In this document: positions 6,301 through 57,087 of the stretch, piece by piece
How positions within the stretch are numbered: position 1 is the stretch's first letter
How the letters are laid out: every line of letters starts with the position of its first letter
NCBI GenBank assembly: GCA_048013815.1
Contig: CM106585.1
Coordinates: 10,788,001-10,852,000, forward strand
Source of the DNA: Setoptus koraiensis
Taxonomy: Eukaryota > Animalia > Arthropoda
Direction: 5' to 3'
Length of the DNA: 64,000 nt
The notes under the pieces: generated by a model
Database searches by the model: none
Told to the model about the DNA's origin: nothing
The model's input: only the letters and a program-made list of their open reading frames with translations
Made by a program: the position numbers and the translations under genes

Positions 6301-9300
6301 TTGGTCGGCGCCACTGGCTGGCGTAACTTGAAACTCGCCCGCCAGACGGGCTAGATAGGGCCGCACGATATATATCTGGCCCGTGTGTTTGTATATATAT
6401 ATGTATTATATAAATGTATTATATAAATGTATTGTGCGTCGCAATAATAATGTAATCTCTGTTGGCCGCAAACAATGTCACCATTGAAACCGAAATGGCG
6501 CCTAAGCGCGCGTGCATGCGCCGCTATGCAGCGGCGGCCCAAGTTGGCGCCGTTTGGGGCCGCTTGGGGCCGCTCGGGGCCGCTTGGCGGGCCTCTGCGA
6601 GCAGGGGTAATTGCGTAATTGCTTCTGTTTGTTTGTGTTTGTGCCACTGGTGTGTCCACTACTTAATATATATTTGCCGTTGCAAACAATACACACCCCC
6701 ACGCAGCTTTATATATATATATATACAGCATATAGCGCCCTGCATACACGTGCTGTATATATATATATACAGCACGTGTAGCACGTACAGCGGCGCATAT
6801 ATCACGCTGGTGCGACACAACATGATAGATGATGAACAGAAATTTGATATAGTTGCAATACTTTAACCACTGGCCAACCACTGGTTTAATAGTAACAGTA
6901 AGCCGGGCTTACTCTTAAACCAGTATTATGTATGTAATATATATGTGGCAAGCGACACAATATACGACCCGACCCCGGATAGCGCCCTGTCAATCGATTG
7001 CGGCGCCCTCACTGTCAGCCGCTCGCACTAAGCTTTGCTGTCTCACGCTTGCTCCGGCTTCCGCCGACACTTGTCCCGCGCCGGCCCAGACTCCTCTTGC
7101 GCCCGTCCGACCCTCGGCCCGGATCGGCGCTGATCGGCGCGGCCCGCCGGACCGCTGACCGCCGACCGCTTCCATTGGTGCTGTTCGGTCGCGTGGTTGC
7201 CAACAACGGCCACTTGCAGTATCGCCTGGCCTGGCATTTGCGGGCAGGGCCCGCAAATATCGGCCATTAATTGGGCCCGAATTGCATCAAATGACGCGCT
7301 TGACGATGAGCGCGGCCGGCCCGCACTCGGCCCGTCCGCTACCAACACAACCCGCCGTCTACCAGAACAACCCGCCGTCTACCAGAACAACCCGCCGCCT
7401 ACCAGAACAACCCGCCGCCTACCAGAACAACCCGCCGCCTACCAACGAAACCCGCCGCCAACCATCTAACCGGCCGCCACTACCCGCCGGAGTGGGTGTG
7501 CCTGCTCACTCAATTAATTCAAGCCGGATAGGCTCTTTGCGCAGCGAGTTGTGTGGCTTGAATTAGAATGTTTTGCGCACAAAGTTTGGGGCGCAAAGAA
7601 AATTTGCGAATTTGAATTGTCGTGCGAATGCAAATGCACCGATGCGAGTTGCTGTTCGCTTGCACAAAACGCCCGTCGATACGCCGGGCCGCCTGTCGGG
7701 TTGCTGTCGGGTTGCTGCCGGGTTGCTGGCGGGTTGCTGCGGGTAGCGGGCGCGCATCGACGGATGCGGGCGCCCAATTTTCAACTACTTGTCTGCTTGT
7801 CCACTTGTCATGTCAGTTTCAAGCGGCCCTGTTGTTGACTATGCCAAATCTAGCATCTAGATCATCATTAGACCAGACACAACAGACACGCCGGCGCCCA
7901 TTGTGGTGCGGTATGGATGTGACAAGTGACAAACCGCTGCTCCATTGCTATGCAAATTTGTGTGTGTGTGTGTGTTTTGTCGTGTTTGTGCGTTGCGTTT
8001 GTCATGTGAATATCTCTCGTCTTGTATTATTACATAACGTCGTCGTCGTCGTCGTGCTCGTGTTTTTAGCTCATCAATGATGGATCGTCACACTACCACC
8101 GACACACACACACACACACACTCGTACCCTAGGTACCCGCCGCAATATACCCCGTGTGTACGTATAGTTATTTTTATATCACACATATAATAATATATCG
8201 ATTCGTTTGCCATTAATCAGCAATCAACTTTATCCGCTCGAGGCTGCTCTGCTCACAAACGCTGGCAAACGCGCAAAATGTGCCCAAAGAGCCAACTTGC
8301 GCCCTCTCGGGCACATTTTTATTTGCGCTGCCATTATTATGCGCGCGTTAGTTTTATTTATCTTTGGGTGCCACTATGAGACATGAACATTTATTGAATA
8401 ATAATGTCACGTAACACACCGGCCAGTCGGTCGCACTACAAAATCCGGTCCCCATGTATCCTCAATCCAACCAGACATCCAGCCGGATATCCATGCTAGC
8501 GCATGTGTGTATCCACACAAGAATATCAGCGCGACACTATCCACGCGATTCAGTCCTTTTCATTCAGACCTTTTGGGGTGCTTCGAAATGCTAAAATGCC
8601 TCGTTCGATTCATTCAATTACACGTCAATCTTACCGGGAAATTGACCTTTTCAGCAATGATGACTCATCATAAAATTAGAACAGATTGAAAGAATTGATT
8701 ATTTATTGCGAAACACACCACCATAATGCTTCGCCGGCAGGGGGGCGGGGGTCGCCATGAAACAGGATACTCCTACATATGATAATTTATATCGTTTTGT
8801 ACTGGCTGCCATAGTGAACGAGCACGGATATCGAGCGTATAAATACCGCCTGCCATTAAACTTGCCAAAACGGTGACGATGAAATTTCTGAGGCCAGAGG
8901 CGCACAGACAGAGGGAGATTGCTCGTTTTTCTCGCTCGCCCGGCCGCAATCTTGTCGGAGCAAGCGACTAAAAAACCGGCGAGTTTTGCCGACAAAATAA
9001 ACACGAAACCAAAGCTCGCCAATTGAATTAACGCAAGAAACGCGAGCGCCGAAAATCAACAAAATTTCCCTCGGCATCACATGACGATTTTAGCTCTCAT
9101 CGCATCACGCGATTTTGCGGATCGGGCAAGCAGGATAGACGGTGATAGTTGCGCTGGCAGAGACATTCATTTGAGACAGCAAATGATCGTTGCGGCGACG
9201 GCCACTTGAAACAACCAATACTAATGATAAATACTAAAAACAGCCAGCGATCAGATTAACCAAAGCAGCACCGGTGCAAGTTGATTATGTTAATATATGA

Positions 9301-12300
9301 TAATAAGTGTACCGCGAATTGACTGACTAACAATGTAAGTTACTTATGCTGCCTTTAGCTGGGCCAAACAACCAACAAACCGACCGATTGGATATTCATT
9401 GGTTGGCATGAATATCTGCGAATGCGACAATCACACATTGGATGGCGGGCTCATTTTGAGCACCGATCGTCTTTCAAATTGGCTCAACCATTACATAATA
9501 ATTAAATAATTGAATAATGCACTCAACGGACTCATCGCGCATTATAAATAGTATATAATTCAAAAGATACTTTTGTGGGTGAACTTTTTCAACACGGTCG
9601 CAGTCTAGTATTCACATGCAAATAACAGATTTGATACAAACTGTGCGAGTCGCATGGCTTCAGGTCTCAAGTGCCGGCTTCTCGGGCCTGACCCAGATAC
9701 GTCAAATACCGCGCGACCGGGCACAAGACAAAGACACGTGCAAAAGAACGAGCCGAAAGGAAGCTGTCGGAGACTGGGCCCAAATGTTACATAACAATAT
9801 CCAGATCAGCCGTCGGCTTGCTGCGGTCGTCCGCCGCCGCTTAGGTAACCCGTCAATGGGTATTGGAGAGCGGACACTTGAGTTGCGGCTCGGCGCGGCG
9901 GCGGCGGCCCCCCGAACGAGAAGAATTTTGCTCAAGTTTTGTCAAGTCTGAGCCGAGCGCGATACTGTCAGATATTGGTAGCGAGGTAAAGAATGAAAAT
10001 TGTTTTGCTTGGCCCACGCGGCACAACATAACATTTTGGCGCGCATTTATGGTGCAAGTTGCAAATATTTCATTCAATATCATGCAGTGGCCGGTCGGCG
10101 AGCGGCAATTTGACGACCACAATGATGATCGTCAAATTGCATGCCACTACAAAGGCGCCCCTATCTGGGCGACGCATCTCGGCAGCGCCAGCAACGACAA
10201 CAACAACAACAACAACAACAATAATGTATATCGGATATATATCACACACAGCTTCTTCGCTTTTCATCTCTTTCGCTCTCGTGAGCCACGATCTCTTGGC
10301 CAGCCAACAACAAAAACAGCGACAACAACAACACATCATAACACATTACGTCACATAACATGACATTAAACAGACAGCGGGCATCATTGGTGTGTTGCGC
10401 GCTGCACCCCAACGCCAACACCAAATATCCGACACCAAATATCCAGCGCCAAACATCCAGCGCCAAACATCCAGCGCCAAACATCCAGCGCCAAATGTCC
10501 AGCGCCAAATGTCCAACGGCAAATATCATTGTGCGCTGCCAGCATCAAACGCATTTCAGCCATTTCACACCATCTATGGCCGTATATGGCCGTAGACACC
10601 ATAGATGGTGCGATAGCGCGCTGGCATACACTGACCCGTAATGACGGCTGTGATATATGTCATTTGGCGAGATTTCGCTCGCGCTTGGGCCGCGATATTT
10701 GCGGATATTTGCGGACATTCGCGGATATTCGCGGATATTTTGGTTTTGGGATATTCGACTGGCACACGCGCAACTTGTGCCAGTTGAATATCCCAAAGAC
10801 GATCGACTTTTGCCAGTCATTGTCCAGCTGTCCGTTGGGCCGGCTGACAGTCGCACGCATTTATTTATATATATAAACTGCGTGTGTCTATATATACCCC
10901 GTGGTATATAGAGCATCGTGCCGATATCAAGCTCGCTTGATACGATGCGCGCGCTGCGCACTCTTGGGCGCCACAATAAATGCATCATCGTGTCGTTGCG
11001 CGATCACTGAGGCCGGTTGCGCAACGCCGTTGCGTAACGTAGCCTCATTAACGTCTACTCAATCTAATGAGAAAAGTCAGCTCGGCCGGCAAACGGCACA
11101 GCCAAGCCGACATTACACATACATTACGACATATTACGAGTTTGTCAAAGTGACTGCTCGCCGGCTCGGCACAGATTTAGTGAGCCACGTGCCGTGATGA
11201 GTGGACACATCAAGCTGACATGAAGAAAGTTATGAACCAACAAGATGCTTATGTAACCAATTCGGTGTCGCCAAGACCGTTACGTAAGCCGCATGCTATA
11301 TATAGCGAATTGCGTAACGCTGACTTGTGAGTGCATATATACGCTGCACGCTACACGCGCCGCGTGCGTTACCGTGCGTTATGAGGGCTGGTTTTGTTGC
11401 GACTTGCGGTATTTATGCCAGTTGTCGCAACTGACTGTCGCCTTTGTTGACGTCACAGCGACAGCAACGGCGACAACGACGACAACACCGACAACAACAC
11501 CGACAACAACACCGACAACAACAACAACCACAACAACGACAACAACGACAACAGCGACAACAACGACAACAGCGACAACGACAACAACGAGCCAGCAGCG
11601 TATAACATAAATATAACATGATGATATTAGTATATTATATAATGTAATAATAGTTGCCGGCTCACTTCATTTGAGACACACGACGCGCTCGTGTTGTTGC
11701 TGTCGTTGTTGTTGCTGTCGTTGTTGTTGCTGTCGTTGTTGTTGCTGTCGTTGTTGTTGCTGTTGTTGTGTTGTCTCATGTTGTTATTATTACGACTTTC
11801 GTTTGTCGTGCAGCGTTTAGACACTGGCTCGCAGCCCGTTACAGTCACACAGCCACACAAAGCCAGCGCGCGCGCGCGCGCTAGAGGGGCCAAATCAAAG
11901 AGTTTAGCCATCAATGGGCCCCAATGTGTTCTCTAACAGTGTGCGTGCGGGGCCCGAGGCGACCGACAAATCTAGAACAAACCGACTAAAGAATAAGACA
12001 AACTGGATTACGTCACACGTTACACTGTATACAACTTTGGCTGCTGCCTGGATGCTGCCGTCTCGCCTGTTAGGCCGAGCGGGGCCTCGCTGGCGCGGCA
12101 GCGTCACTCGCGGTCCCACTCTGGCCAGTCTAGCCGCCAGACTCTGACGGGGCCCCAACTAGCGCGTCCAGCCAGACAGCGCCAGTCGACAGACACAAAC
12201 ACGACGAGCCGTCGGATGAGACGCGCCGAGACAAACAAAGCGCCGGCAACGGCGCCCAAAACAACGCGCCCGCCAGACACTCTGGCCGGCGCGGCTCGCC

Positions 12301-15300
12301 GAGACCGTCCAGTGTCAGGTGGATCTCTCTGGCTGGTGGGATCTGGGCCCGGCCCCGGCCCCCGTACCTAATCTGTAATCCTCTTAAAGGCAACGGGTAT
12401 TAGTTGTGCGTGTCGCTGGCTGGCCGCTCGCTGGCTGGCCGGTCAGCCAGAACAGGCGCAAAGAAGCGCGGTGCGGGGCCCGCCAGCGACGGGCCGGGTG
12501 TGAGTGTGTGTGTGTGTGAGTTATATTGACTGGTCACTTACCCGAAGCGAAAGTATTATTATCACTGTTCCCGTCTGATTTCCTATTGTCTTGGCCTGTG
12601 GCGCTTGGCTGCTTGTTTGCTGCTGTTTCGGGCCCCACCGAGGCAAACTCGAAGCTGCCCATTGTGTTGTGCTTGTGGGGCCCATCGCGGCCACTACAAG
12701 TGTAATTAACAGTGGCAGTCGGTTGCTGGTCAGTGTTGCGCGACACGGCGTTGCACGATTCGCTGCTGCGACCTCTAAATTGATTAGCGGCCGCGGATAC
12801 TTGTTCGCGTTGCGTGACCGTTTGGCCGTTGTTGTCGTTGTTGCTGTCGTTGTTGCTGTTGTTGTTGCTGTTGTTGTTGCTGTTGTTGTTGCTGTTGCTG
12901 TTCGGGCCATCAATGTGACGACGGCGGTCGCTGTCGTTGTTGTCGTTGTCGTTGTTGTTGTCGTAACTGTTGTTGTCGCTGTTGTTGCTAATGGCGCTTG
13001 AATTATCACAATCAAGATATTGCGTAATGAAGTAAGTTTTGAAAGATATGCCACTTATGTTGGACCTGTTCTCCTCCAGAATGTAACTGTGCTTCTTGAC
13101 GAGATTTCTGTTGTGCCGGCCATCGAGTTCAACGAGCGCCAATGCGTGCCAAGTTGTTCGGTCGGTCGGTCGGTCGGTCGGTTTATCCGTGGTTGTGCGC
13201 CATTTATCCAGCCAGCAATTGAGCCACCGGGCCACCATTTAGCCGGTAGAGGGGGCGTCATTTGGCCATTTGGCCATTTAGCCATTTAGCCGTTAGTTTG
13301 GTGGTGGTGGAGCGGTCATTTGGCCATTAGCGGCACACACAACCGAACAAGCAGAGATAACGGCAATGATAACAACACAAACAAATTGATACGTTAGACA
13401 ACGTTAGTGATGTAAGCGATAATCCACACGCTCGCCGTATATTTATACGGGGCGCCCCATTATCACGTGTGCACACTCTGGATGTGGATATCGTATCACC
13501 TGGCGGTGGATACGATAAGCTACAGCGCTACTCTGGCCGTGCGGCTAGAGTACGGCGGCATTACGTAAGCAATTACGCTGGCTCGCCAATATTACTTAGT
13601 GTCTGGCCTGGTGGATATCTCATGGCACTCATCCATGGGCCATATCAGAGAGCCATACTACATAGAGTGGATATCCACGGTGAGCACAGTGAACAGTGTG
13701 CACAGTGTACAGGTATATCCGCACACTCACCTGTGTCACACAGGTGAGTGTGCGGATATAGCGGAAACAGCTGACCAATTTGCATAGACTCATGTAGTGG
13801 CCGGCAATACTTACTGGAGGGTAAAGTCGCTTATGTGTATCTTGCCGCCGACTCCGTTAGTTTCCAATCTGTTGGCCAGCGTGGTGGTGTTGCCAAACAG
13901 CGAGTACCTGGGCACTCTCAGGCCCACAATTCCCGCCATTACGGGGCCCGAGTGGATGCCAATGCGCATCTGATCGCACACAAGCCGGCACAATCGCCAA
14001 AAGGCCAAAGTCGCCAGTCGCCGGTGTCCAGTTATCCGTTATGATAATGAGTGTGCATAATAGCATATTCATTATAATATTATAATAATGTTTGCGACGC
14101 TCATAGCGGGCGCCAGTTGGCAGCAACGAGCGGATAAAAGCCATTGATGGGGCCCACCGGCCGGCCGGCATTGATGTGTGTTGAGTGCGCCAATTGCGTT
14201 GGTGTAATGAGCGCGCGCCAATTCGGAATATCGGGATAACAAGCAGAGAGGGCAAAACACAAGAAGATGGGAGGGGGGGGGGCAGACAGCAAACAAAGAT
14301 TAAGTTAGATTTAATGAGTAAAGTGAAAGTTGCCCATTGATTGAAAGCGGGGGCCCCAGCGCCCGTTGCCCAGTTACGTTCAGTTACATGGGGGCCAGTC
14401 GCATTAGTTGGCGGCGTTGAGTGGGCCCGCTAAACGGCACAGGCGCAGGTACAGGTACGGGCCGCCAGGTGAGCGGATGGCCAGGCCGGCCAATTGGCCC
14501 AATTGACCAATGCGCCGGTTCGGCTTGCGCTGGCCAGGCCAAAGGGCCGGCCGCCTCATAAATAATGTATCGCACTAGCGTCTTTGGCACGGTGTTACAT
14601 AACACCACGCCAAAGTGGCTCGTCATTTGCGCCGCTTGTGCCATTTGTGCGCGCCCGCACCGCCAGCCGGCCCCGGCCCGCACCGCTGGCCCCGTGCCCC
14701 GGCCTAATACCTCGGCCCCCTCCCACCGGCACCCGAAATAGCCCCGGGTTCGGTGTTCGGGCGGAGGGGGGGGAAGGGGCCGCACTTGGCCTTGCCACGG
14801 TGCGCCGGCCGGAGCGCTTAAGCCGGCCGCTTGGTGGCCGCTGCTGCTGGCTTGTTGGCCAGCAGCAGCGCCCACGCTAACTAACTTGCGTTCGGCCTTG
14901 CGAGCCAGCGCCGTGACGCGCAACATAGCTGGTGGCTATCGCTGTGTTATAACTGTCAGAATGTGTGCGTGTGTGTGTGTCCAGGTAACACCACCGATTG
15001 CATTACGTAACACGATGATATAACAGTGCGTTGCTAACTAAGCTGCTGCGTTGCGACAACAACAACAACAACAACAAGCCAACAACGTATTACGTAACAA
15101 GCCAACAACGACTAGCTGTCGTTGTTACGTAATTGTATTGTTTGTACTGTCGGTGCAGTGTGGCAGTGTGTCGTGTCGCGCCACGTAACGTGTCGTAACG
15201 TGTCCATCAAGCAAGCCAAGCAGCAGAAATGTTGCTGGCTGGCTGGCTGACCGGCTGATGGACGCATTGCAACGCATCACTATCAACCAAACTCACCTGT

Positions 15301-18300
15301 ATGGGCTCGTTGTCTGCGGGCGATCTAACGCTCGCTATCACCTTCACCATGTCCAATCCCATTCTGACGCAACGGTCAGCGTGATCCAGCAGCGGCTCGG
15401 GCAAGCCGCCCACAACAACGTACGCGTCGCCTATGGTCTCCACTTTATATACGCCATGGATATTTGTTAAATTGTCAAATTGTAAATATAATGTATTCAA
15501 TAATCTCACTATATCTATGGGGCGCACATTCTCTGAGCCGCACATTTTTGTGAAGCCAACAATGTCGCTGTACAAGCACGTGACTAACTCAAATGATTCT
15601 GATTCAACTTGAACGCCCTGGCTCAACAATGACGCTATCTTGGCCGGAAATATGTTGTGCAATATTTCGTTGGTTCGCTGATTTTCCAATCTCAATTTTG
15701 AATCCATTTGCTTCAGATCGTTGCTGGCCTGATCGAGTTTCTCAATGAGATCGCGTTCCTTTTTGTGCGAATGACTTATCAGCATTAAATCACGCGCTCG
15801 GTCGTGCAGCGCAAAATCCGACATGCTGAGGCCGCATTGAATCAGCTGATCCAGATTATCTACGCGAGCCGAACACAAATACAGACAATATTTGCCGTTC
15901 AGCAGCATGATCATCTGACCCTTCAGTCGCAATCTGATGGAGCTCGACTTTAGCTGGAGCCTCTCGTCCTCGTGCTGCTGCTCTAATTGTTGCTGTTCGT
16001 CTAATTGTTGCTGCTCGCTCGCTTGTTGTTGTTGCTGTTCGTTTTGGTACCGCTGTTCACTGTGATGTTGTTGTTGTTGTTGCTCACTATGATGTTGTTG
16101 CTGATGTTGTTGTTGTTGGCCGTGCTGTTGTTGGCCGTGTTGCTGCTGCTGCTGGCTCGGTTGTTGCTGCTCTTGGGCCGAAGGGTGCACTGGGCGCTGC
16201 ACCAACAATTGGCTGCTCTCTAGCTGGACGGAAGCCCTCTGATTGGTGGTCAAGTTGTACCAGTAGTCGGCCTGGTGATCGCCAGGGGGCGCGCTGCCGG
16301 AAATGGGGCACTTTGGGTGGTGTGATGACGGTTGATTATGCTGATTACTGGCCGCCGCCGCCGCCGCTGCTGCTGCTGCCGGCTCATGGTGCTGCTGCCT
16401 ACTGTCAGCTGACTGATGAATGAGGCCATTGTTGGTGTTGGCGTTGGTGCAGGCGATCAATGATGGATGGCGTTGCTCGTCGTCATCGTCGTCGTCGTCG
16501 TCGTGAATATGATGCTGTTGCTGCGTTTGTTGCCTATTTGGATTCAGCACCACACACTGTCCAGACTGCTCGTGGTGGGCGCTCGTGGTCACTTCCGGTG
16601 TCATAGGCGCCGCTGTCGTCGTTTTGTGCTGCCCATTCCCAAATGACCTGCCCGACGCCAGATGCGCCGTCTGATTGGCATGATTAGAGCCAATTAAGTG
16701 GCTCTGTTGTTGTTGTTGTTGCTGTTGTTGTTGCTGTTGTTGCTGTTGTTGTTGTTGTTGCTGCTGCTGCTGGTCAACGTCGTCGCGATCTGATTGATCG
16801 ATTACGCCAACACTAGCAGCAGTTGTTGTTGTTGATGACGCAACAGCGTTGCTATTCCCAATTGTCCCGCCAGGTGACCGGTGCTGCTCATCATCATTAG
16901 CCAACAGTCTATCAGTCATTATTAGATTATTCGCCTTGTTAGTGTGCCCACCTGTCGCCCCTTGGGCACCCTGGTGGCCGGTGGCGGCATCGAGCATTTT
17001 GGCCTGTCGCATGCGCATAGCGGCCGCCGTCAGCGGACACATGGACGGTCTCTGCTGATAGAGTTGTTGTTGGTGCTGTTGTTGTTGGTGCTGTTGTTGC
17101 TGTTGGCCAGCCGCTGCAGCGTCGGTGATTGATGACCTAGTTTGACTGACTAAAGATGATTGATTCAACCTAGTGGCTAGCTCGTCAACGAATTGACTGT
17201 CGGTCAATTTGTTGTCGTTGTCGTTGTCGTTGTTGTTTGCTCTAATTAACTCTCGCTCTAATGGCGTCGATGCTGTTGTTGATGCTGCGGTTGTCGGCTT
17301 GCCCTGGTGCTGCTGCTCACCTTGTGGACTGAACAATTGCAATGCCATCTTGCGTTGTCTGTCGGCATTTAAAACTAATGGACGCGTCTTCACCACAAAC
17401 ACTTGATTGGTGTGATCGACAATTGACTCAAAGCTAGTGTCTATCTTTGGCCTAATTATCTTAAATAAATGAGTGAATTTAATACCGTTATTGCTCTGCA
17501 ATATTGACTCTTTCCAATATAAACTAGTGATTCGTAGCAACGATTTGCCCACTTGAACAATCTTGAAATCCCTATCAAATATAACGTGAAACGGAAAGGC
17601 GTCCATCATAATCTCTGTATTAATTATAGAATCGTTGACATTGGACGATATGAGATCGTATATGTTCGACATGAGGCCCTGCTTCTTTTTGGAGGCGGCC
17701 GTGGCCGCTTGTTTGCCCAGCTTCACTGATTCCACTGTCTGCAGAATGCTGGCTCGCCGATCCGACGACGCTGGCAAGTTGCTGTTGTCTTGCTGCTGCT
17801 GCTGTTGCTGATTATCCGACGCAACAACCATGTTATTGTCGGCACTGTCGGCGCCCGCTGTCGTGCAATCGATGTCGTCTTCGTTGGGCAGATCGTTGTT
17901 GAAACTTGAGCGCTTTCTGTCTATCTTGAGTATCACATGATCATCGTTTGAGGATATTTTGACATTTTGTCCGGCCGTGGTTGCTGTGGTTGTTGTCTCG
18001 TTGCATTCGGTTATCATTATGTCCGTTTGGAAGAACTCTTTGGCCACTGCCATCACTAGACCTCGCACAATTGGACTGAGACCCTTTCTCTCACTATAAT
18101 AATGCAAATACATTGAGCCGCCCGTATCTCTGGCCTGCTGTTGTTGCTGTTGGGCGCTTGTTGCTGCTGGCGAGGGCGATCTGTTGTTGTTGTTGTTGTT
18201 GTTGCTGCTGCTGCTGCTGTTGTTGTTAGAGGATTGGCTGTTGTTGTTGTTATCACATGGTTGATTTGGCTCTCTGTCGTTGGCAGCGCCACCCGTTGCC

Positions 18301-21300
18301 GTGGTGGCCAAGCTCGTGGTGACCCTGAAAGAGGGCGCCCGCATTCCGGGATAAATAGAGGCCAAGTGGTCGTGTAGATTGTCTAAATTGGTTAAAAAAT
18401 CGAACAGGTTACTGCCTAAAACGCGCAATATCTGATCGTAGCCATTCTTTTGGCAATAAATCAAAAAGTGCTTTCCGAATTCCTCCAGGCAAGTCTCCAC
18501 GCTGAGACCGGACACAATTGAGGCCGCCTCCACCAATTTAAAGGTCATGTCGTCCTCGTACACCTGATGCATGAGGAACGAGGCCCCGCACAGCTTCACG
18601 CCCGATATGTTGCTGGCGAGGGGCCGGCGTTAGTTTTCGCGCCATTGATTCGTTTCATTTCATCGAGTTGGGTTTCGTCGAGTTGGGTTTGGTCGAGTTG
18701 CGTTTGGTCGGTTCACGGTCGCGTAATTGGATGGACAGGGACAGGGATAAAACAGGGGCCAAAGGGGGCCAAAACAGGCACGAAACAGGGACAGGACAGG
18801 GACAAAACGGGGATACAACAGGGATACAACAGGGGTAAAAGAGAAAACGGTTAGAGAGCGATGATTTGGTTAGTGCGCAATCGGCAATTTCGTAGCTCGA
18901 GGCCCCTCGTTTGTTTGTTTGTTTGTTTGCTTTGTTGCTATATCTTGTTTTATTTTATTTTTTGCCTTGTTTGTCTCGGCCTCTCACTGTCTCTATATCC
19001 AGATATATATATGACTGACAAACGAGTCGCCAGAGTGTGCGAGTTGGCTGCCCGACACGACAACCGTCTCGGCTAGATTACTAAATGGGGTCAATGCGTG
19101 TCATACACGCGTGTGACAACAAACTTGGGCACGGCAAACACTGCAACGTTGCAACTGAAACTAACGACAGGTGCCCAATTGTTCACTGGGTCTACCACTG
19201 CCAGTCAGTTACGTAATGTGGGCATTGATTGGGGGCCAAACTGCAAACAGTTTTTACAGTCATTTTCCCTTGGCTCGCAAACTGTATGTGCAGAGCAAAC
19301 AATCTTTGTCTCGGTTGTCGTTGTTGCTGCCGTTGTCGTTGTTGCTGCTGCTGTTGTCGTTGTTGCTGCTGCTGTCGTTGTTGCTGCTGCTGTCGTTGTT
19401 GCTGCTGCTGTTGTCGTTGTTGGTGCTGTTGTTGGCGGCGTTGTCGGTGTCGGTGTCGTGGATGTTCTCGGCGTCGTATTGGCGACGAGAGCGACAGAGC
19501 AAACAACGCGCCTGATACAGTGATACGTGTCGCACCTACTAATGAATTGGGCACGCGCCATCATGGGCGTCGCGCCAGACGCTGACCGACATCATGTGGC
19601 ATCGCATAAGATATATATATATATATTGTAGCTTGCCAGTTATATCGTATATTACGTATCGTATATACGTTATATCGTGCGACAATTTACCGTTATAACC
19701 GGCCAATGCAACACCGATATACAAATAAACAGATTGTCAATTAAATGGACAAGCCGGCCAGACAGCCGGACGTGGCAGTCTGGCAGCCTAGGGCCGCTCA
19801 ATGGCCAAATGAATAAAAGATAGAACAAGTGCTCAAACGTAAGTGGGGCCCCACAGACGCGCCCGACAGTCACAATCAGTGTGGCCGGCGTGTATTCATT
19901 GGTTGTTCACTGGTCACTATTAATAGCTTATATTAATGTTTGCTCACTCTCGCTCACCTTTGCGTGGGCCCGAAGCTGAGCGAGCGGCCGGCCAGCCAGC
20001 GAGAGCGGCTGTCAGTGGGGCCCCGGCTCGCAGCGACTCTCGCAATGGCGCAAACAACAATGACACTAAGCGACAGTTATAACAGTTATAAGTGATATAA
20101 CAAACTGGCTAGACAGACAGACAATTTTGTCGGTTGTTGCGGTTGTTTGCTGAGCGTGGCTGCCGGGCCCCGAAACACACAGCCAGCACTGGCGCTGCCA
20201 GGCTAACAGGGCTAATGGGGCCAGTGGCGCTGGTCTCATTTGCATATTTGATGGCAGCAGCTCTCTGCTTCAATGGTTAACACGTGTGCAAATACCCGGG
20301 GTCGTGTTGATGAGGCAACAAACAGACACAGTTATCAGCAATCCAAGACAATCCATTGAAAAATCAAATACCGACACAACGAGGCCATTTTTGCACAGGC
20401 CAGCCAATCCATTGTTTGCCGCTCGTTTCGGCTATATTTGTCGGTATATTCGTCGGTATATTCGTCGGTATATTCGTCGGTATATTTATCGGTATATTTG
20501 TCGGTATATTTGTGCACCGGCTGGCGCCCGCCAAACGAGCCTAGGTGAGAGACGAGATTTTTCGCGGGCCCCAAAACGCGTTATTGCTACTGATATTACA
20601 CTGATCATAGTGTATATAATACTACTACGTGTACCACTGTTATTATTGTGTTACTTCAGTCATTCACTTGTGAATAACGGCCCCCCCCCGTAATAAGCGC
20701 GAGCGGGGCAATGGGGCCATTTGTGGGCGCTGAGTATGCCAGTTATTATGCCAGTCATAATGCCAGCCATCACGGCCGGGCCATTATGCAGTTATTGAGC
20801 CAGTTATTTTGGGGGCCAGATATGGGGCTCGGCGGTTATTTGTTGTAGTCGTGTGTTATCCCTTAAATGGCTCGCATCGGTGAGAACAACAATTGATGAG
20901 CCAGTTAGACATGATTATACTATTATGACGATACCGCTGAGAGCACTGTTTGCGCGCGCCCCACTAAAGCAGCTCTAGGCAACAACTGTTAGCTGAAGAG
21001 GGCCCGACTTTATCGCTGCTAGGTATGCCTCGGAGCCAACTGGGGCCCGCGCGCCGCTCACCGATCGAGCGGCCGTCCGCTGGCGATCCGCTAAACGTCC
21101 GCCGGCCATCGACTGGCCGACAGTGACCCCACTGCCATGCAGCCATCACTTATTTGGCTCAACAAACAAGTGCAACCAAGTGAATCTTGATTCTTGATAG
21201 CGGCCGCTGATGACACGATGCCCGGATAATCGTCGTCGTCGTCGGCGCGCTCGCCGAGCCGTCGTCGAGTCGTTAGCGGCCCGTTAACGGGCCGCTAGCG

Positions 21301-24300
21301 GGCTGCCAGCCGGGCCCGGCCCGATTGGCCCACTCACCGCTAACTAGCTCAACTGGCCAGCTAAATGGCTAAACTGAGCGCCCAAGATATTGATGGCCGG
21401 CGATGATTTGTGTGCCAGCCAGTGTTTGCCCAGCGCCGTAATGGAGTGCGTGTTACTCAATTATCTGTCCGTCGGAGGCCCATGGATCGCCGGCCACAGC
21501 CAGCCAGCCAGCCAGCTCCAGTGATCGCCAGTCGGCGACGGTCAGCGCCGGTCAGCGCCAGCCAGCGCCCCCTAAGCGCCAGCCATTCTCGATCCGACGG
21601 GCAGCTTCGGACGGGCGCGCCCGGCGCTGCATACCGGCCTCACGGCCACATATTTGGTGGGGCCCGTGCGCTATATATAGCAGCCGTAGATACTCATTGT
21701 TGTTGTTGTTATTAAATGGGTATCATCTCGTCTGTCATAACTGTCACAAGGCAATCAAGCAATCATTTTCGTTTTGGTCGCCCAAACGCGCGCCCCCGTG
21801 TTTGTGTGCGCGCGCCCAACCGATCACCTGACCGAGCTAAACAGGTTAAGTGATCTAAATGGAGTTGGGGCCCCGATATCACGACTCAACGCCGATAATC
21901 ACTATGCAATCAGGCGGCCAGTGGCTAACGTGCCAGTGGCTCGTTTGGGCGCTCGTGGGCGCACCGCTGGCCCCAGCCAACAGCGACCTACTGAGCGCCG
22001 CTTTTTACGTGGCTCATAAATTGGTACGTGGCCGCTTGTGTCGCTGCCGCTGCTGTTAGGCGAGCCTCTGCTCTGGGGCTCGGGGCCCCAATGGAGCCCA
22101 GCGATGTGAATGGTGCGGTCAAGCCGGGCGAACCGTATCGCACACGGAGGGCAATATTCACGGATTGCAGCGAACGCACCAAACGAGTCGAGCGCATGCC
22201 TCACCGGCGACTCGCGCCAACGGGCCCCACACTGAAGGCGAAAAGAGGCGCCCAGAGGAGCGATTGCGAGCGTCAAGTGAGCGGCGGCCCAACGCGCCGC
22301 TCGCCGGCAACGAGAGGCCCACTCGCCGGCAACGAGAGGCCCACTCGCCGGCAACGAGAGGCCGACTCGAACGCGAGACAACAGAGGCCACGAATAAACA
22401 TATATATGTATATATATAAACATATATATCTTTATATATAAATGTGAATGAATGCAAATATTATGAAAAGGCGAGTCAGCACGTACGCGACTTGTTATGA
22501 TTGCCGCGTGCGTGTGTGTGTGTGCGCGCGTGAGTGTGTGTGTGTGCTTTATTTGCTCTAGTGCCATTAGAGCCGGAGCGGCGGCGGCGGCGAGCGGGCC
22601 AAGATAGCGACGACGGCGATCGCTCGGCGGTGACTATAGCGACTATCGCGACTATCGCGACTATCGCGACTTTGGCGCAGTTCGAGTAGTGCAATAAGGC
22701 GCTAGGTGAGCTAGCCCAAACGGTGAGCTAGAACAACAATAACGGCAACTTGTAGTGTCGTTGGCGCCGCATTACCGTTAGCCAGCTAACAACGGGCAAT
22801 AATCAAGTGCCTGTTGTGCGTGTGTAATTTGATTCGCGCCGGGGCACAAAACAGAGTGGGCGACAGGGGGAGCCAACAATCGAGCCGCTAGAGAAACATC
22901 ATCATCTCGAGATCAACCGGCTCTGACTGACTCTGTTCCGTTGGCTGGCTGTCGGGCCGGCTGTCGGGCTGGCTCTTGGGCTGGCTGTCGGGCTGGCTCT
23001 TGGGCTGGCTGTCGGGCTGGCTGTCGGGCTGGCTCTTGGGTCGGCTCTTGGGTGGGCTCTTGGGTGGGCGCGCCCGGCCGGTGCAACAGCGCAGTCGGTA
23101 GCGGGTAGCCGGCAGCGGGTAGCCGGCAGCCGCTTGATTTATTTATACGCAAACACGCTGCCCGCTAGCGGAGCTAGGTGAGCTTGCCGGCAGCGGGGCC
23201 CCTATTGCTGGCAATTATTCAGTTGCTGCTGGCGGGCCACACTTGGGCCCCATCGAGCCTGGCTGGCGGCTGGCTGGCTGGCTCTTTGTCGCTGCTTATA
23301 TCTAGCCAAGCAGCTAGATATAAATAAATATAAACTAGCCTTTGCCAGTTCCACTTTATTAACCTCCATTTATTCACACAAACACACGCACACACACACA
23401 CACGCACACACACACACACACACACACACGCGCACACACACACACACAACGGTATTTGAAGTGACAGTGTGTGTAAGCAAACATTGTGACATTGTGTCGC
23501 ACCAACTTGGCCGAGTGAATTGCCGGTGAATTGCCGGGGCCCCAACTGCACACACACACACACACACACAAATTAATGCCATTGGACTCTGTCGGTCGGT
23601 CGCTCGCTCGCTGGGCGACAGACAGAGAGAGAGTCCAATGGCAGAGGGGCCCCCTCAAGTGACTTGAGCGCCGGCGAGCTGACTGGCGGCGGCCGGCCGA
23701 GTCCAATTAGATGAATAGAGAGCGGCGCAGTCGTGACTATAATAACGACAACACTTACGCTTGTGTGTGCCTCGTCGTCTATCTGTGCAAATCAAGCCAA
23801 CAACGACAACAACTTGGCCGACTTTTTTACTTAATCTACACACACACACGCACGCATACGCATTCCAAGACCAATTCACCTTGGCTATATTAACTATCCG
23901 ACTAGCCAAATGGGCGACTTGAGCTGCCGTCGAGGGTGCCCAGCGGCGCCACCGGTGAGTCAGCGCTCGACGGCCCCCGCTACGAGGCTTATTTATATAT
24001 AAATATCGCCCCAACTGGCTGCGGGCTCGCACTGGCTGCGGGCTGGCTCAATTTCCAAGTGGAGCGGCGCGCGCTTTTTAGCATACATCTGTCGCGCGTT
24101 GGGGCCCCATTTTGCTTGGGGTCGTTTTGGTTGCGTTTGTTGATTATTCCATCTAATGACATCTCCGCCAGTCAGCTGAGTATTAACAACTCGTGGCACG
24201 AGTCGCACGCGCCAGCCACACACAAACAAAGCCAGCCAGCCAGCGTTGTGTTGAGTTGAGCTCAGCCGAGTCGAGTTGAGCCGAGCCGAGCCGAAATCTG

Positions 24301-25227
24301 GCGAATTCGCCGAATCAGAATCACTCACTTTCAATGATTTTGCACCCGCATTCTGGGCACAATCTGGGCACAATCTGGCCGCCGCCGCCGCCAGGTAACA
24401 ACCACAGCCAACAACTGCGGGCAGGCCCACAGAGTTTTGGGCCCATTATCTGCATCATTACATGCGCACACAAACCGTGAGCCGGCGGGCCCCGCAAGCA
24501 AGCGCAACTGTGACCGGCAAATCCTATTTGCCGCGCTAAGCTGTTTCGCTTTTCATTTAACTCGCCAGCAGCGCGACAAGCGCTTGTGCGTTGCGTAACG
24601 TCGCTCTCAATATGCGACTCTCGACTCTCAAAATGTAACTCTCCAAATGGGCGCTCGCATTTTTCGCCATTGGCCCCATTCGCGCCATTGGCCCCGTTGG
24701 CCGCGTTGGCCCCATCAGCCGCGTTGGCCCGTCGGCCCCGTTGGCCCCGTCAGCCGCATAGACCCCGTCGGCCCCACTGGCCCCACTGGCAGCCGCGCCA
24801 CCAGCCAGCCGTGGCCAGTGATTTAAATTCCTTGCCGCTTGCCGCCCGCCGCCGACTTGCGATGCCGGCCATCGAGCGATTGTTGCGCGCTAAAAGTCGA
24901 GCGGGCCCCACTCGGCGCAGCCAAACACCTGTTTCCTGTTGGCGGCATCATTGGCTGGCGCGGCCGCTCGCAGAGCGCTGGCTCCACTCTAGTGGCGGGT
25001 AGTTGCGCGCTAGTGGCGGCTAGTTGCGCGCTAGTGGCGGCTAGTTGCGCGCTAGTGGCGGCTAGTTGCGGGTAGCGGCAGCGTCAGCCTGATGGCGTCA
25101 GGCTCAAACGGCAACGGCGACAGGCGTCTTGCCAGTTTGGGGGCGCTGCCGTCGCGACGACGAGCGGCGCTGGCGGGCAAGCGCGACAGAGGCCCTAATA
25201 AAGTTGCTTGCTCAACCGACAACAGCA

Positions 25228-25262
<35 letters not shown>

Positions 25263-25672: not shown

Positions 25673-25704
<32 letters not shown>

Positions 25705-38808: not shown

Positions 38809-39455
38809 CACGATAAATGGGGGCTCCTCGTGTTGTTATTGTCGAGGCTGTTGCATTAGCATATCACTCTATCCATTGTTTGTTGTTGTTTGGTTGGTTG
38901 TTGTTGTTTGGTTGGTTGTTGCGTAAGAGCTAAACGCAAACACACACTTACACACGAACGCGCATTTCGACACACAATAGAATCAGTGTAGTCAATTAAT
39001 CTAGTTGATCACCCTAGCTTGACTCAAAGCTCACTCGCTCCATTCCGGCTACTAAAACTCGCAACTCGTCGCTCGCTTTACTCGGCTCTTCTTGCTGCTT
39101 TAGCTAACTTGAGTGTAAGTAAACTATTTGATCAAATTGATCCATTTGTTATGCAATTGTTATTATATAATTGAAATTCATACAAGTGATACAAAATTCA
39201 AGTCACTCATGCTGGGCTGTTGTTTGTTTATCCATGTGTGTCTATCTGTGTTTGCGGCAAACGTAATTGAATTGTCTGACACCAACGACCATGGTTGTGC
39301 CGCAATCGTGCTGCCGCTACTGCGATGGTATATGCAACGAAAATAGTACTAATAATAATAATTTTAATTTACACTTACAGTATCTCTTTCCAGGCGGCAT
39401 CGCCAAATAATTGCAACACCATATCCTCTAGGCAGCAATGTATGAAGCCGTACAT
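2066..39455 (-). CDS. GUCY1B1: Soluble guanylyl cyclase, H-NOX/PAS/coiled-coil/cyclase (whole gene span; beta1-like N-terminus)
   Basis: Firm join is complement(12542..13107,13815..13969,15297..18612,39379..39455). All introns are GT-AG with matching phases (2,0,2). The product starts [26 protein letters not shown] and carries [34 protein letters not shown] and RIGIHSG. The 3' extension to 2066 is less certain. About 1,370-1,800 aa depending on the 3' end. The symbol is family-level only. Confidence 0.88.
2552..2767 (-). repeat. Uninterrupted polyglutamine tract, 72 CAA/CAG codons
   Basis: 216 nt of (ttg/ctg)n on the plus strand, in frame with ORF 2066-3373. Confidence 0.95.
4385..4500 (-). 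CDS. Candidate alternative terminal exon of the sGC (…[17 protein letters not shown])
   Basis: cccAG acceptor at 4501-4502 is phase 1 compatible; the frame is open to TGA at 4385-4387. No homology support. Confidence 0.25.
4701..4760 (-). CDS. Candidate 60-nt symmetric (phase 1/1) sGC micro-exon ([20 protein letters not shown])
   Basis: Perfect G|GTGAGT donor at 4700 and a CAG acceptor at 4761-4763; preserves the frame. The polypyrimidine tract is weak. Confidence 0.3.
5426..5514. repeat. Nested inverted-repeat (foldback/MITE-like) element
   Basis: Outer 10-bp inverted repeat TCGTGAATAT/ATATTCACGA; inner 13-bp inverted repeat at 5432-5444/5458-5470; 18-bp perfect palindrome CGCGTGGATATCCACGCG at 5460-5477. 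No clear target-site duplication. Confidence 0.55.
7341..7460 (+). repeat. Minisatellite, 20-bp unit ACCAGAACAACCCGCCGYCT x6
   Basis: Direct inspection; the first and last units are degenerate. Confidence 0.9.
10421..10510 (+). repeat. Minisatellite, 14-bp unit CCAAAYRTCCAGCG x about 6
   Basis: Direct inspection. Confidence 0.85.
12542..13107 (-). CDS. GUCY1B1: sGC exon 4: end of cyclase domain plus Asn-rich tail
   Basis: cacaacAG|A acceptor completes CA|A (Gln) and gives [16 protein letters not shown]...KTYFITQY. It ends at G|GTAAGT; if unspliced it reads through to TGA at 12534. Confidence 0.8.
13714..13760. repeat. Perfect 47-bp palindrome (23-bp arms around one central base) in sGC intron 3
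   Basis: TATATCCGCACACTCACCTGTGT-C-ACACAGGTGAGTGTGCGGATATA. Confidence 0.95.
13815..13969 (-). CDS. GUCY1B1: sGC exon 3: cyclase catalytic core
   Basis: AG|ATG CGC ATT GGC... encodes [51 protein letters not shown]; donor CA|GTAAGT. Confidence 0.92.
15002..15133. promoter_or_regulatory. Cluster of three perfect RTTACGTAAY (PAR-bZIP/vrille-type) motifs in sGC intron 2
   Basis: Matches at 15002-15011, 15089-15098 and 15124-15133. Function is inferred only. Confidence 0.4.
15297..18612 (-). CDS. GUCY1B1: sGC exon 2 (3,316 nt): H-NOX, PAS, coiled coil and first half of the cyclase, with large polyQ insertions
   Basis: ACTAAC branch point and cgccAG acceptor at 18613-18614; donor CAG|GTGAGT at 15296; conserved sGC motifs throughout. 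Confidence 0.93.
20441..20513 (+). repeat. Minisatellite, 12-bp unit TCGGTATATTYG x about 6
   Basis: Direct inspection. Confidence 0.85.
30109..30193 (+). repeat. Minisatellite, 21-bp unit (CAGAACTYGCGCTGTACCCKS) x4
   Basis: Direct inspection; no unique spacers. Confidence 0.85.
33519..33620 (+). repeat. ATATCCACAC tandem units interleaved with (CA)n
   Basis: Direct inspection; shares the ATATCCAC core with the foldback at 5426-5514. Confidence 0.8.
38761..38802 (+). repeat. (AC)21 microsatellite
   Basis: Direct inspection. Confidence 0.95.
39379..39455 (-). CDS. GUCY1B1: sGC first coding exon (77 nt; not in the ORF track)
   Basis: ATG TAC GGC TTC ATA CAT...TGG AAA GAG ATA CT|GTAAGT encodes [25 protein letters not shown], the canonical H-NOX N-terminus. 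A possible 5'UTR intron lies at 39506-39990. Confidence 0.9.
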
Positions 39456-42973: not shown

Positions 42974-43168
42974 TTTTTGTTATTGAGCTTTTTTTGAGCT
43001 TCAAAGTTTAATCTCATAAGTTCGAACGTATGCTTGAATGTTATGATATTCGTGGAACATGTTATTGTAAAATTTGAAATAAAAACGTACGATTTCCTGC
43101 TAATGGATTTAGCTTAGAATTTAAAACAGCCTTCTCTAACAGTGGGAATTGTCATTCAAATCATATTC

Positions 43169-53988: not shown

Positions 53989-53996
53989 ATCACAAA

Positions 53997-56981: not shown

Positions 56982-57087
56982 ATTGGTGAGACTATAGACT
57001 GTTTCTCACTGAACACTACTTCCAGTATAGATTATAGGTATATATTGCATTTGTGTTACGATGACTATCTATAAATATCTAAATATG

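What the first reader, a model, noticed from the sequence alone, without database searches (positions are those of the whole stretch)
12542..15620. Hybrid sGC: beta1-type heme sensor joined to an alpha-type catalytic half-site
Seen: the cyclase domain has both metal-binding Asp residues (SDIVGF at 15564-15566; GDAY at 15426-15428) and the MRIG Arg. The beta-side set is degraded: RYSLFG for [14 protein letters not shown] for NTVNLTSR, and no MKGK lysine. The linker [16 protein letters not shown] also looks alpha-like (IFP…QG). Established: in mammalian sGC, alpha1 supplies D486/D530/R574 and lacks heme, while beta1 supplies the heme His105 and E473/C541/N548/R552/K593. Inference: this subunit binds heme like beta but catalyses like alpha. 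With a canonical beta partner it could form a two-heme heterodimer; alternatively it is an ancestral-type or altered-specificity homodimer.
Basis: partly seen in the sequence, partly recalled or inferred. Interest (0 to 1): 0.78.

Follow-up and report, generated by a model that had tools for sequence, protein, structure and literature searches.

The report
Heme-keeping alpha-type guanylate cyclase subunit
This mite gene encodes a nitric-oxide-sensor enzyme subunit that keeps the heme-binding site of a "beta" subunit but has the catalytic half-site of an "alpha" subunit; it is not a one-off hybrid, because it belongs to an old, unnamed animal gene family found from sea anemones to ticks.

Summary
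A four-exon minus-strand gene (39455-12534, 1373 aa) encodes H-NOX, PAS, coiled-coil and cyclase domains. It has the heme His and YxSxR, a non-polar NO-type distal pocket, both metal Asp and the phosphate Arg. The beta-side set is degraded: C541 is Ser, N548 is Thr, and there is no KGK lysine.

It is not a recent chimera. In a 72-sequence alignment the same residue pattern holds in a clade I call X: anthozoans, a jellyfish, a placozoan, an annelid, a centipede, ticks and mites. Clade X is monophyletic (100/99) on PAS+coiled-coil and on PAS+coiled-coil+cyclase. It is separate from canonical alpha, beta1, beta2-like and Gyc88E, and it groups with alpha (96/90; alternatives p about 0.05). The H-NOX tree shows no significant conflict.

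X, alpha and beta1 lie in tandem in a sea anemone and in a chigger mite. Three close relatives keep all four exons under strong purifying selection. Beta-side positions drift while alpha-side residues are invariant.

Most likely it is an alpha-type subunit that still binds heme and needs a beta1-type partner, giving a two-heme NO receptor. That mechanism is inferred, not shown. No RNA data exist, and I found no paper describing the clade.

The parts
39379..39455 (-). Exon 1: start codon and first H-NOX helix ([25 protein letters not shown], split codon Leu). GT donor.
   Evidence: Motif scan and tblastn with tick, placozoan and annelid orthologues. Splice phase joins in frame to exon 2 with no length change against Ixodes. 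85-88% identical at the same relative place in three relatives, dN 0.07-0.12 against saturated dS.
15297..18612 (-). Exon 2: rest of H-NOX, PAS (HNOBA), coiled coil and the N-terminal half of the cyclase domain.
   Evidence: Pfam HNOB 6.8e-39, HNOBA 2.2e-38, Guanylate_cyc 8.4e-26. AG acceptor and GT donor. The donor position after '...PIQ' is shared with X, alpha and beta1 genes of Leptotrombidium and Actinostola.
13815..13969 (-). Exon 3: cyclase segment MRIGIHSG...[16 protein letters not shown]...KIHISDFTL.
   Evidence: Pfam Guanylate_cyc 1.8e-18. PDB alignments. 94-96% aa identity in three relatives, dN about 0.03-0.05.
12534..13107 (-). Exon 4: end of the cyclase domain without a KGK motif, an Asn/Ser-rich tail, and the stop codon.
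   Evidence: tblastn with the Fragariocoptes and Capitella proteins. Splice phase gives the same length as P0019. Found downstream of exon 3 in two of three relatives.
18372..18374 (-). Proximal heme ligand His106 (beta1 H105).
18087..18101 (-). Y-x-S-x-R heme-propionate motif (Y197, S199, R201 = beta1 Y135, S137, R139).
18069..18071 (-). Distal-pocket Ile207 (beta1 I145). Non-polar, so NO-type; Gyc88E has Tyr here.
15564..15566 (-). Metal-binding Asp1042 (alpha1 D486; Gly in beta1).
15426..15428 (-). Metal-binding Asp1088 (alpha1 D530).
13964..13966 (-). Triphosphate Arg1133 (alpha1 R574; Thr in beta1).
13901..13903 (-). Ser1154 at beta1 C541. Cys in most clade members; Ser in this mite, its three close relatives and Fragariocoptes; Ala in D. 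farinae.
13880..13882 (-). Thr1161 at beta1 N548, the ribose-orienting Asn. Thr in alpha and in nearly all clade members.
   Evidence: Residue role from PMC2576301.
13868..13870 (-). Arg1165 at beta1 R552. Varies K/R/Q within the clade and is Gln in the three closest relatives.
18111..18314 (-). About 65-aa low-complexity insert in an H-NOX beta-hairpin loop, between beta1 residues 124 and 127.
   Evidence: A shorter insert sits at the same place in P0019.
15945..17369 (-). About 470-aa poly-Q/N/D low-complexity insert in a PAS-domain loop.
   Evidence: (HNOBA matched in two stretches). The length of this exon's product varies from 645 to 939 aa among relatives.

Best explanation
Shown. The locus is an intact, selectively constrained four-exon gene of an acariform mite. 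It encodes a 1373-aa soluble guanylate cyclase subunit. It belongs to an old metazoan paralogue family, here called clade X, which is distinct from canonical alpha, beta1, beta2-like and Gyc88E-type subunits.

All sampled clade members combine two things. First, a complete NO-type heme site: His, YxSxR and a non-polar distal Ile. Second, an alpha/C1-type catalytic contribution: two metal Asp plus the triphosphate Arg. All lack the beta/C2-type contribution: the ribose Asn is Thr and there is no KGK Lys. On PAS+coiled-coil+cyclase the clade groups with alpha. In a sea anemone and a chigger mite its gene lies in tandem with the alpha and beta1 genes.

Inferred. The protein binds ferrous heme and senses NO (or CO) but not O2. 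It cannot build a full active site with itself. It dimerises through its PAS and coiled-coil regions with a subunit that supplies Asn, Arg, Lys and the guanine-reading Glu/Cys. Canonical beta1 is the most likely partner. That would give one composite GTP site plus one pseudo-site, and two heme sensors per dimer.

In evolutionary terms it is best read as an alpha-side paralogue that kept the ancestral heme site which canonical alpha lost. It is not a fusion of a beta1 sensor to an alpha cyclase.
For: Gene model: GT/AG at all junctions, in-frame joins, and the same length as orthologues across each junction. The same four exons occur in order in three relatives, with dN 0.03-0.13 against saturated dS.

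Domains: Pfam. PDB alignments fix the residue numbering.

Residue table of 72 sequences: every clade-X row except Nymphon P0062 has H105/Y135/S137/R139. All have D486, E473, D530 and R574. Almost all have Thr at 548, K/R at 552 and no KGK. Position 145 is Ile in nearly all (Phe in D. farinae, Met in Capitella, Leu in P0062). Alpha rows share the catalytic pattern but have lost the heme residues. Beta1 rows have Gly/Thr at the alpha positions and the full beta set. Beta2-like and Gyc88E rows have the complete set.

Beta-side positions drift inside the clade: 541 is C/S/A and 552 is K/R/Q, with Gln in the three nearest relatives. This is what one expects if they sit in a pseudo-site.

Trees: clade X is 100/99 on PAS+coiled-coil and on PAS+coiled-coil+cyclase. 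X+alpha stand against beta1+homodimeric types at 96/90 and at 91/93 on cyclase alone. The H-NOX tree does not nest X inside beta1 and does not reject X+alpha (p-AU 0.24).

Synteny: X, alpha and beta1 lie within 35 kb in Leptotrombidium. X, alpha-like, beta1 and a second beta1-like gene lie within 38 kb in Actinostola.

Residue roles (Asp/Asp/Arg from one monomer, Asn/Arg/Lys from the other) come from PMC2576301.
Against: There is no biochemical or expression evidence. No RNA run was available, and the laid contigs were genomic.

The partner is inferred only from residue complementarity and from linkage in other species. No alpha or beta1 gene lies in this window, and this genome's sGC census was not possible.

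X+alpha sisterhood is only moderately supported. The alternatives X+beta1 and X+homodimeric types have p-AU 0.050 and 0.046 on 370 columns, and X+beta1 has 0.29 on cyclase alone. The trees are unrooted, because no receptor-GC or AC outgroup was at hand.

Thr for Asn lowers activity but does not necessarily abolish it, so a weak homodimer cannot be excluded.

The large low-complexity inserts in H-NOX and PAS could affect folding. Without cDNA I cannot exclude that parts of them are spliced out.
Confidence: 0.6

Rival explanations
1. The subunit works as a homodimer, an 'ancestral-type' or atypical sGC. Its two symmetric sites are weakened but functional, with Thr replacing the ribose Asn and another basic residue replacing the missing Lys.
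For: It keeps E473 and, in this species, Arg at 552. Most clade members keep C541. Homodimeric heme-bearing sGCs exist: Gyc88E/MsGC-beta3 (cited in PMC1435932) and a choanoflagellate sGC active alone.
Against: All known homodimeric types sampled here keep Asn548, Arg552 and KGK. Clade X lacks Asn548 in nearly all members sampled (the long-branch Nymphon P0130 has Asn) and lacks KGK in all. Position 552 drifts K/R/Q and 541 drifts C/S/A, including Gln at 552 in the nearest relatives. This indicates no catalytic constraint on that side.
Confidence: 0.13
2. It is an alpha-type partner, but of a complete-set subunit (beta2-like or Gyc88E-like) rather than canonical beta1. A related option is that it competes with canonical alpha for beta1, mainly as a regulator that titrates the partner.
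For: Any subunit with Asn/Arg/Lys could complement it. Heme-bearing heterodimers with split catalytic roles have precedent in C. elegans GCY-35/GCY-36 (cited in PMC1435932). Mites and ticks keep a canonical alpha as well, so this protein is an extra alpha-type subunit.
Against: The gene is linked to alpha and beta1, not to beta2/88E-type genes, in the two loci examined. The invariant metal Asp and Arg across sampled cnidarians, a placozoan and bilaterians argue for catalysis rather than mere titration.
Confidence: 0.15
3. It is a recent domain-shuffled chimera: a beta1 H-NOX fused to an alpha cyclase in the mite lineage.
For: The H-NOX piece matches only beta1 among solved sGC chains. The cyclase exon resembles alpha/C1.
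Against: The same architecture and residue pattern occur in cnidarians, a placozoan, an annelid, a centipede, ticks and mites. The clade is monophyletic at 100/99. H-NOX is not nested in beta1 and does not reject X+alpha. The similarity to beta1 is shared retention of heme-site residues.
Confidence: 0.02
4. It is a gene-model artefact or pseudogene: exons 3-4 (or exon 1) belong to another transcript, or the locus is decaying.
For: No RNA evidence is available. Intron 1 is 20.8 kb and the low-complexity inserts are huge.
Against: Exons 1-3 are conserved in order and strand in all three relatives, and exon 4 in two of them, with dN far below dS. Splice phases fit. The cyclase-internal intron position is shared with other sGC genes. 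The annotated Fragariocoptes protein P0019 spans the same junctions. No other cyclase exons lie in the window.
Confidence: 0.03

Closest known systems
Canonical sGC alpha subunits (GUCY1A1/A2; insect Gyc-alpha-99B, 'head-specific guanylate cyclase')
   Same: Same four-domain architecture. Same catalytic contribution: both metal Asp, the triphosphate Arg, Thr at the Asn548 position, K/R at 552, and no KGK. Closest group on PAS+coiled-coil+cyclase (96/90). The genes are adjacent in a mite and a sea anemone.
   Different: Canonical alpha has lost the heme ligands (His, YxSxR) and its H-NOX evolves fast. This protein keeps them all. It falls outside the alpha clade (100/100). Mites and ticks have a canonical alpha in addition.
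Canonical sGC beta1 (GUCY1B1; Gyc-beta-100B)
   Same: H-NOX heme site, non-polar distal pocket and Cys78. It is the best solved-structure match for the H-NOX domain.
   Different: Beta1 lacks Asp486 (Gly) and Arg574 (Thr), and supplies Asn548, Arg552 and Lys593. This protein is the reverse. It is outside the beta1 clade (100/97 to 100/100).
Atypical/homodimeric sGCs (vertebrate beta2 and echinoderm beta2-like; Gyc-88E/MsGC-beta3)
   Same: Heme-binding H-NOX together with both metal Asp and the Arg. Some database records of clade members are auto-named 'beta-2'.
   Different: Those carry the complete catalytic set, including Asn, Arg and KGK. Gyc88E also has a distal Tyr for O2. This protein lacks the Asn and Lys and has a distal Ile. 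They are separate clades.
C. elegans GCY-35/GCY-36 (and Drosophila Gyc-89D with Gyc-88E): heme-bearing subunits proposed to act as alpha-like/beta-like heterodimers
   Same: A precedent that both partners of an sGC heterodimer can carry a heme site while splitting the catalytic residues between them (PMC1435932).
   Different: Those are O2-type sensors of the atypical lineage. This is an NO-type pocket in a different, much more widely distributed clade linked to alpha and beta1.
Adenylyl cyclase C1 domain
   Same: Exon 3 scores best against the C1 domains of AC5/AC8/AC9, which also have Thr in '..VTLAN..' and supply the metal Asp and Arg.
   Different: It is a guanylate-type Glu/Cys(Ser) enzyme in the sGC architecture. 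The likeness reflects the shared role, not membership.

Membership tests
Soluble guanylate cyclase (H-NOX-PAS-CC-cyclase) | HNOB + HNOBA + class III cyclase domains in one soluble chain | tested here: met
   Pfam HNOB 6.8e-39, HNOBA 2.2e-38, Guanylate_cyc 8.4e-26 and 1.8e-18. Full-length alignment to sGC subunits.
Canonical beta1 | Heme ligands His105 and Y135-x-S137-x-R139, with a non-polar distal pocket | tested here: met
   H106, Y197, S199, R201, I207.
Canonical beta1 | Supplies Asn548, Arg552 and Lys593, and lacks the alpha-side Asp486 and Arg574 | tested here: not met
   Thr at 548, no KGK, and Asp and Arg present at the alpha positions.
Canonical beta1 | Falls in the beta1 clade | tested here: not met
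   The beta1 clade (100/97 to 100/100) excludes it. The H-NOX tree also keeps it outside beta1 (90/71).
Canonical alpha | Supplies Asp486, Asp530 and Arg574; beta-side Asn and Lys lost | tested here: met
Canonical alpha | Heme-free pseudo-H-NOX (His105 and YxSxR not conserved) | tested here: not met
   All heme residues are present, whereas the alpha rows are degenerate.
Canonical alpha | Falls in the alpha clade | tested here: not met
   The alpha clade (100/99 to 100/100) excludes it. It is the neighbouring group (96/90).
Beta2 / Gyc88E-type homodimeric sGC | Complete catalytic set in one chain (Asp, Asp, Arg, Glu, Cys, Asn, Arg, KGK) | tested here: not met
   The Asn and Lys are missing, and Cys is Ser.
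Beta2 / Gyc88E-type homodimeric sGC | O2-type distal Tyr (Gyc88E branch) | tested here: not met
   Ile here; Tyr145/Gln149 in Gyc88E rows.
Clade X (unnamed; records auto-named 'beta-1-like' or 'beta-2' in ticks and mites) | Monophyly with cnidarian, placozoan, annelid, myriapod and chelicerate members | tested here: met
   100/99 on PAS+coiled-coil and on PAS+coiled-coil+cyclase. Nearest named sequence is Fragariocoptes P0019 (82% over the cyclase core).
Clade X (unnamed) | Heme residues plus alpha-type half-site in the same chain | tested here: met
   table; relatives.
Clade X (unnamed) | Actually binds heme, senses NO and needs a beta-type partner | not testable with these tools
   Needs protein expression, spectra and activity assays.

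The most novel reading that the evidence does not exclude
Clade X is a previously unrecognised third lineage of NO-type sGC subunits and the surviving form of the ancestral alpha-type subunit, still loaded with heme. It arose with alpha and beta1 by tandem duplication before the cnidarian-bilaterian split, and the X-alpha-beta1 array is still intact in a sea anemone and a chigger mite. It forms two-heme X/beta1 NO receptors in cnidarians, annelids, myriapods and chelicerates. It appears to have been lost in insects and vertebrates, though I did not test that directly.
Probability: 0.4. Interest if true: 0.75.

Novelty: new variant of a known kind. Interest (0 to 1): 0.6.

Why it matters
Textbook NO-sensitive guanylate cyclase has one heme, on beta1, and an alpha subunit whose H-NOX is an empty relic. 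How that asymmetry arose from symmetric homodimers is an open question. A conserved family that is alpha-like in catalysis yet keeps an intact NO-type heme pocket would be a natural intermediate, especially as it is still linked to alpha and beta1 in two distant animals.

It predicts two-heme NO receptors, possibly with different NO dose-response, in ticks, mites, cnidarians and annelids. This makes the question directly testable with recombinant proteins.

It also flags systematic mis-naming ('beta-1-like', 'beta-2') and merged gene models in public annotations. Because sGC is a drug target, a chelicerate-specific subunit absent from the top hits for vertebrates and insects might interest tick and mite biology.

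Tried and rejected
1. RNA evidence. The look-up of sequencing runs found no RNA holder. The three runs laid were genomic contigs covering the introns, with no splice joints. Transcript structure therefore rests on homology and selection.

2. My first AU tests used a faulty clade list that omitted three nested rows. They gave meaningless rejections. I discarded them and repeated the tests.

3. The H-NOX-only tree is unresolved at depth, and the alpha H-NOX rows are very long branches. I used it only to show there is no nesting in beta1 and no significant conflict.

4. Rooting. No receptor-GC or AC outgroup sequence was available as a file. P0068 turned out to be a sponge (Oscarella) sGC, not a non-animal outgroup. 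Polarity is argued from character states only.

5. Synteny look-ups. The Montipora protein was not on record. The Capitella locus showed no neighbouring sGC within 10 kb.

6. Search for alpha or beta1 in this window: none.

7. Seven literature searches found no description of this clade. Absence from the held library is not proof.

8. The 'alpha-like linker' argument was examined and down-weighted.

9. I did not run the large representative-protein search, because the word search and family scans had settled the family. No structure prediction was run, because the spliced protein has no reference and it would not decide the question.

Full report
WHAT IS THERE

The finding's range (12542-15620) is the 3' part of a larger minus-strand gene. 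A 1130-aa open frame at 15207-18599 carries Pfam HNOB (6.8e-39), HNOBA (2.2e-38) and the first half of Guanylate_cyc. A small frame at 13811-14008 carries the next part of the cyclase domain.

I completed the model using orthologues as guides and the junction sequences. It has four exons: E1 39455-39379, E2 18612-15297, E3 13969-13815 and E4 13107-12534. All junctions are GT/AG. The joins are in frame, and at each junction the length equals that of tick or mite orthologues. The product is 1373 aa.

The best hits are mites and ticks, and an earlier scan note also calls this genome a mite.

CHECK OF THE OBSERVATION

- Asp of SDIVGF at 15564-15566.
- Asp of GDAY at 15426-15428.
- Arg of MRIG at 13964-13966.

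phmmer alignments to the human alpha1 and beta1 chains of 6JT0 fix the numbering:
- The two Asp are alpha1 D486 and D530.
- The Arg is alpha1 R574.
- The Ser of RYSLFG is beta1 C541.
- The third Thr of NTTTLANR is beta1 N548.
- The following Arg is beta1 R552.

No KGK follows. On the sensor side, His106 (LHDHL), Y197-x-S199-x-R201 and a distal Ile207 are present. The H-NOX piece matches solved beta1 chains at E 1e-36 and no alpha1 chain.

The 'alpha-like linker' is literally there but weak. IFP is found only in some relatives, and QG only in this mite (its nearest named relative has EG).

IS THE GENE REAL AND CONSTRAINED?

No RNA run exists for it, and the contigs I could lay were genomic. Instead I fetched three related contigs (L004-L006). 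Exons 1-3 occur in all three, and exon 4 in two of them, in the same order and strand.
- E1 is 85-88% identical at the amino-acid level.
- E3 is 94-96% identical.
- E4 again lacks KGK.

Nei-Gojobori estimates give dN 0.03-0.13 against saturated dS. The intron that splits the cyclase domain after '...PIQ' sits at the same place in X, alpha and beta1 genes of Leptotrombidium and Actinostola. The annotated Fragariocoptes protein P0019 spans the same junctions. A mis-joined model or a pseudogene is unlikely.

WHAT FAMILY IS IT?

Three word-index searches gave the closest relatives, canonical beta1 and canonical alpha. I aligned 72 sequences with E-INS-i, splitting merged gene models first. I then read the key columns. 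Four patterns appear:
- Canonical alpha: alpha-side Asp/Asp/Arg present, Thr or Ser at 548, mostly Lys at 552, no KGK, heme residues lost.
- Beta1: Gly and Thr at the alpha-side positions, full beta-side set, heme residues present.
- Echinoderm and hemichordate beta2-like, and Gyc88E: the complete set; Gyc88E also has a distal Tyr.
- A fourth group, here clade X: heme residues present (one divergent row, Nymphon P0062, lacks the His), Ile145 in nearly all, Asp/Asp/Arg present, almost always Thr at 548, Lys or Arg at 552, no KGK.

Clade X holds the window's protein and sequences from these taxa:
- Other acariform mites: Fragariocoptes, Medioppia, Dermatophagoides and Leptotrombidium.
- Ticks, with two paralogues each.
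- Mesostigmatid mites.
- The centipede Strigamia.
- The annelid Capitella.
- A placozoan.
- The corals or anemones Montipora and Actinostola.
- The jellyfish Sanderia (identified).

Within the clade the alpha-side residues are invariant, while the beta-side positions drift:
- Position 541 is Cys in most, Ser in this mite, its three close relatives and Fragariocoptes, and Ala in D. farinae.
- Position 552 is Lys, Arg or, in the three closest relatives, Gln.

That asymmetry is what a subunit shows when these positions face the non-catalytic pseudo-site. The roles of the six catalytic residues, three from each monomer, are as described for a eukaryotic GC structure (PMC2576301).

TREES

- On PAS+coiled-coil (206 columns), clade X is monophyletic at 100/99, alpha at 100/99 and beta1 at 100/97.
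- On the cyclase core (164 columns), alpha and beta1 are each recovered as clades, while clade X is recovered only weakly (76/39, with the placozoan row outside it). X+alpha form one side of a branch at 91/93.
- On PAS+coiled-coil+cyclase (370 columns), X is 100/99 and alpha 100/100. The split {X, alpha} against {beta1, beta2-like, Gyc88E, sponge} has 96/90.
- AU tests make the alternatives borderline: X+beta1 has p 0.050 and X+homodimeric types p 0.046. On cyclase alone, X+beta1 is not rejected (p 0.29).
- The H-NOX tree is unresolved at depth. It keeps X outside the beta1 clade and does not reject X+alpha (p 0.24).

There is therefore no significant conflict between domains, and no sign that a beta1 sensor was grafted onto an alpha cyclase. 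The likeness of the H-NOX to beta1 is shared retention of a slowly evolving heme pocket.

The trees are unrooted. Homodimeric types, and class III cyclases in general, have the complete residue set. The simplest polarity is therefore one loss of the beta-side residues on the branch leading to X+alpha, followed by loss of heme binding in alpha only. This step is inference.

GENOMIC LINKAGE

Two database proteins are merged gene models. Reading their loci shows the following:
- In Leptotrombidium deliense, the X gene (4574-12102, +), canonical alpha (20383-31416, +) and beta1 (38918-36856, -) lie on one 39-kb contig.
- In the anemone Actinostola, X (10001-17311), an alpha-like gene (29374-31259), beta1 (34985-37604) and a second beta1-like gene (43683-47504) lie in series.

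Several vertebrate records are alpha+beta1 fusions in the same order, in line with the known adjacency of GUCY1A1 and GUCY1B1 (my own knowledge). This points to an old tandem array, X-alpha-beta1.

In the present window the array is not kept. No other cyclase exon is present. The neighbours are housekeeping genes.

HOW IT MOST LIKELY WORKS

Shown: an intact heme-type H-NOX with an NO-type pocket; intact dimerisation modules; a cyclase domain that can supply metals and one phosphate contact but not the ribose Asn or the second phosphate Lys; long-term conservation of exactly that pattern.

Inferred: the protein binds heme and NO, and is catalytically incomplete on its own. It pairs with a subunit carrying the complementary half, most likely beta1. 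That gives one active site, one pseudo-site and two hemes.

Rivals are:
- A weak homodimer.
- Pairing with a complete-set subunit, or a mainly regulatory role.
- A recent chimera, effectively excluded.
- A model artefact, unlikely.

WHAT IS KNOWN

Reviews and phylogenies that I could read recognise alpha, beta and atypical groups. They do not describe a heme-retaining alpha-type clade (PMC1435932, PMC7400543, PMC10073611 and the choanoflagellate preprint). Four further searches added nothing.

Heme-bearing heterodimers with split catalytic roles have a precedent in C. elegans GCY-35/GCY-36 (cited in PMC1435932). The principle is therefore not new. The lineage, its NO-type pocket, its breadth and its linkage to alpha and beta1 appear to be.

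Public names for members ('beta-1-like', 'beta-2') are automatic and misleading.

VERDICT

The gene is an ordinary member of an under-described, ancient sGC family. The interest lies at the family level.

Noticed in passing
L003 (Leptotrombidium contig) 4574-38918; L002 (Actinostola contig) 10001-47504: Public gene models P0002 and P0001 merge two and three neighbouring sGC genes into single proteins of 1028 and 1750 aa. Read apart, they reveal a tandem X-alpha-beta1 array conserved between a chigger mite and a sea anemone.
   Followed up: yes
window 15945-17369 and 18111-18314 (minus strand): Exon 2 carries very large in-frame low-complexity inserts: about 470 aa of poly-Q/N/D inside a PAS loop and about 65 aa inside an H-NOX hairpin. 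Exon 4 adds an Asn/Ser-rich C-terminal tail. The length of this exon's product varies from 645 to 1130 aa among relatives.
   Followed up: partly
L004 13327-13479, L005 12572-12724, L006 13213-13365: In the three closest relatives the residue at beta1 R552 is Gln (ANQLE), whereas this window and Fragariocoptes have Arg. The rest of exon 3 is 94-96% identical.
   Followed up: yes
window 18613-39378: Intron 1 is about 20.8 kb. It is GC-rich (55-62%) and full of simple repeats, with no convincing coding frame. Exon 1 sits at the edge of an AT-rich block, about 1.2 kb from a divergently oriented EF-G gene.
   Followed up: partly
window 40625-57005: An AT-rich (36-43% GC), compact block of long, apparently intron-poor housekeeping frames: EF-G (40625-42970 +), ORC3-like (43172-45376 -), Pex2/12 RING (45747-46670 -), Ulp1 protease (47031-48341 +), KDM6 JmjC (48555-50012 -) with a TPR part (50005-51774 -), CTLH-RING (52870-53985 +), and an 820-aa frame without a Pfam match (54546-57005 -). 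This contrasts sharply with the GC-rich sGC locus.
   Followed up: partly
window 2069-3466 (minus strand): A 466-aa open frame with no Pfam match, Cys-containing at its start. Its nature is unknown.
   Followed up: no
P0020/P0028, P0022/P0021, P0024/P0036: Ticks carry two paralogues of the clade. One has Arg or Lys at position 552 and an IFP linker; the other has Lys and an ILP linker. This suggests a duplication within Parasitiformes.
   Followed up: partly
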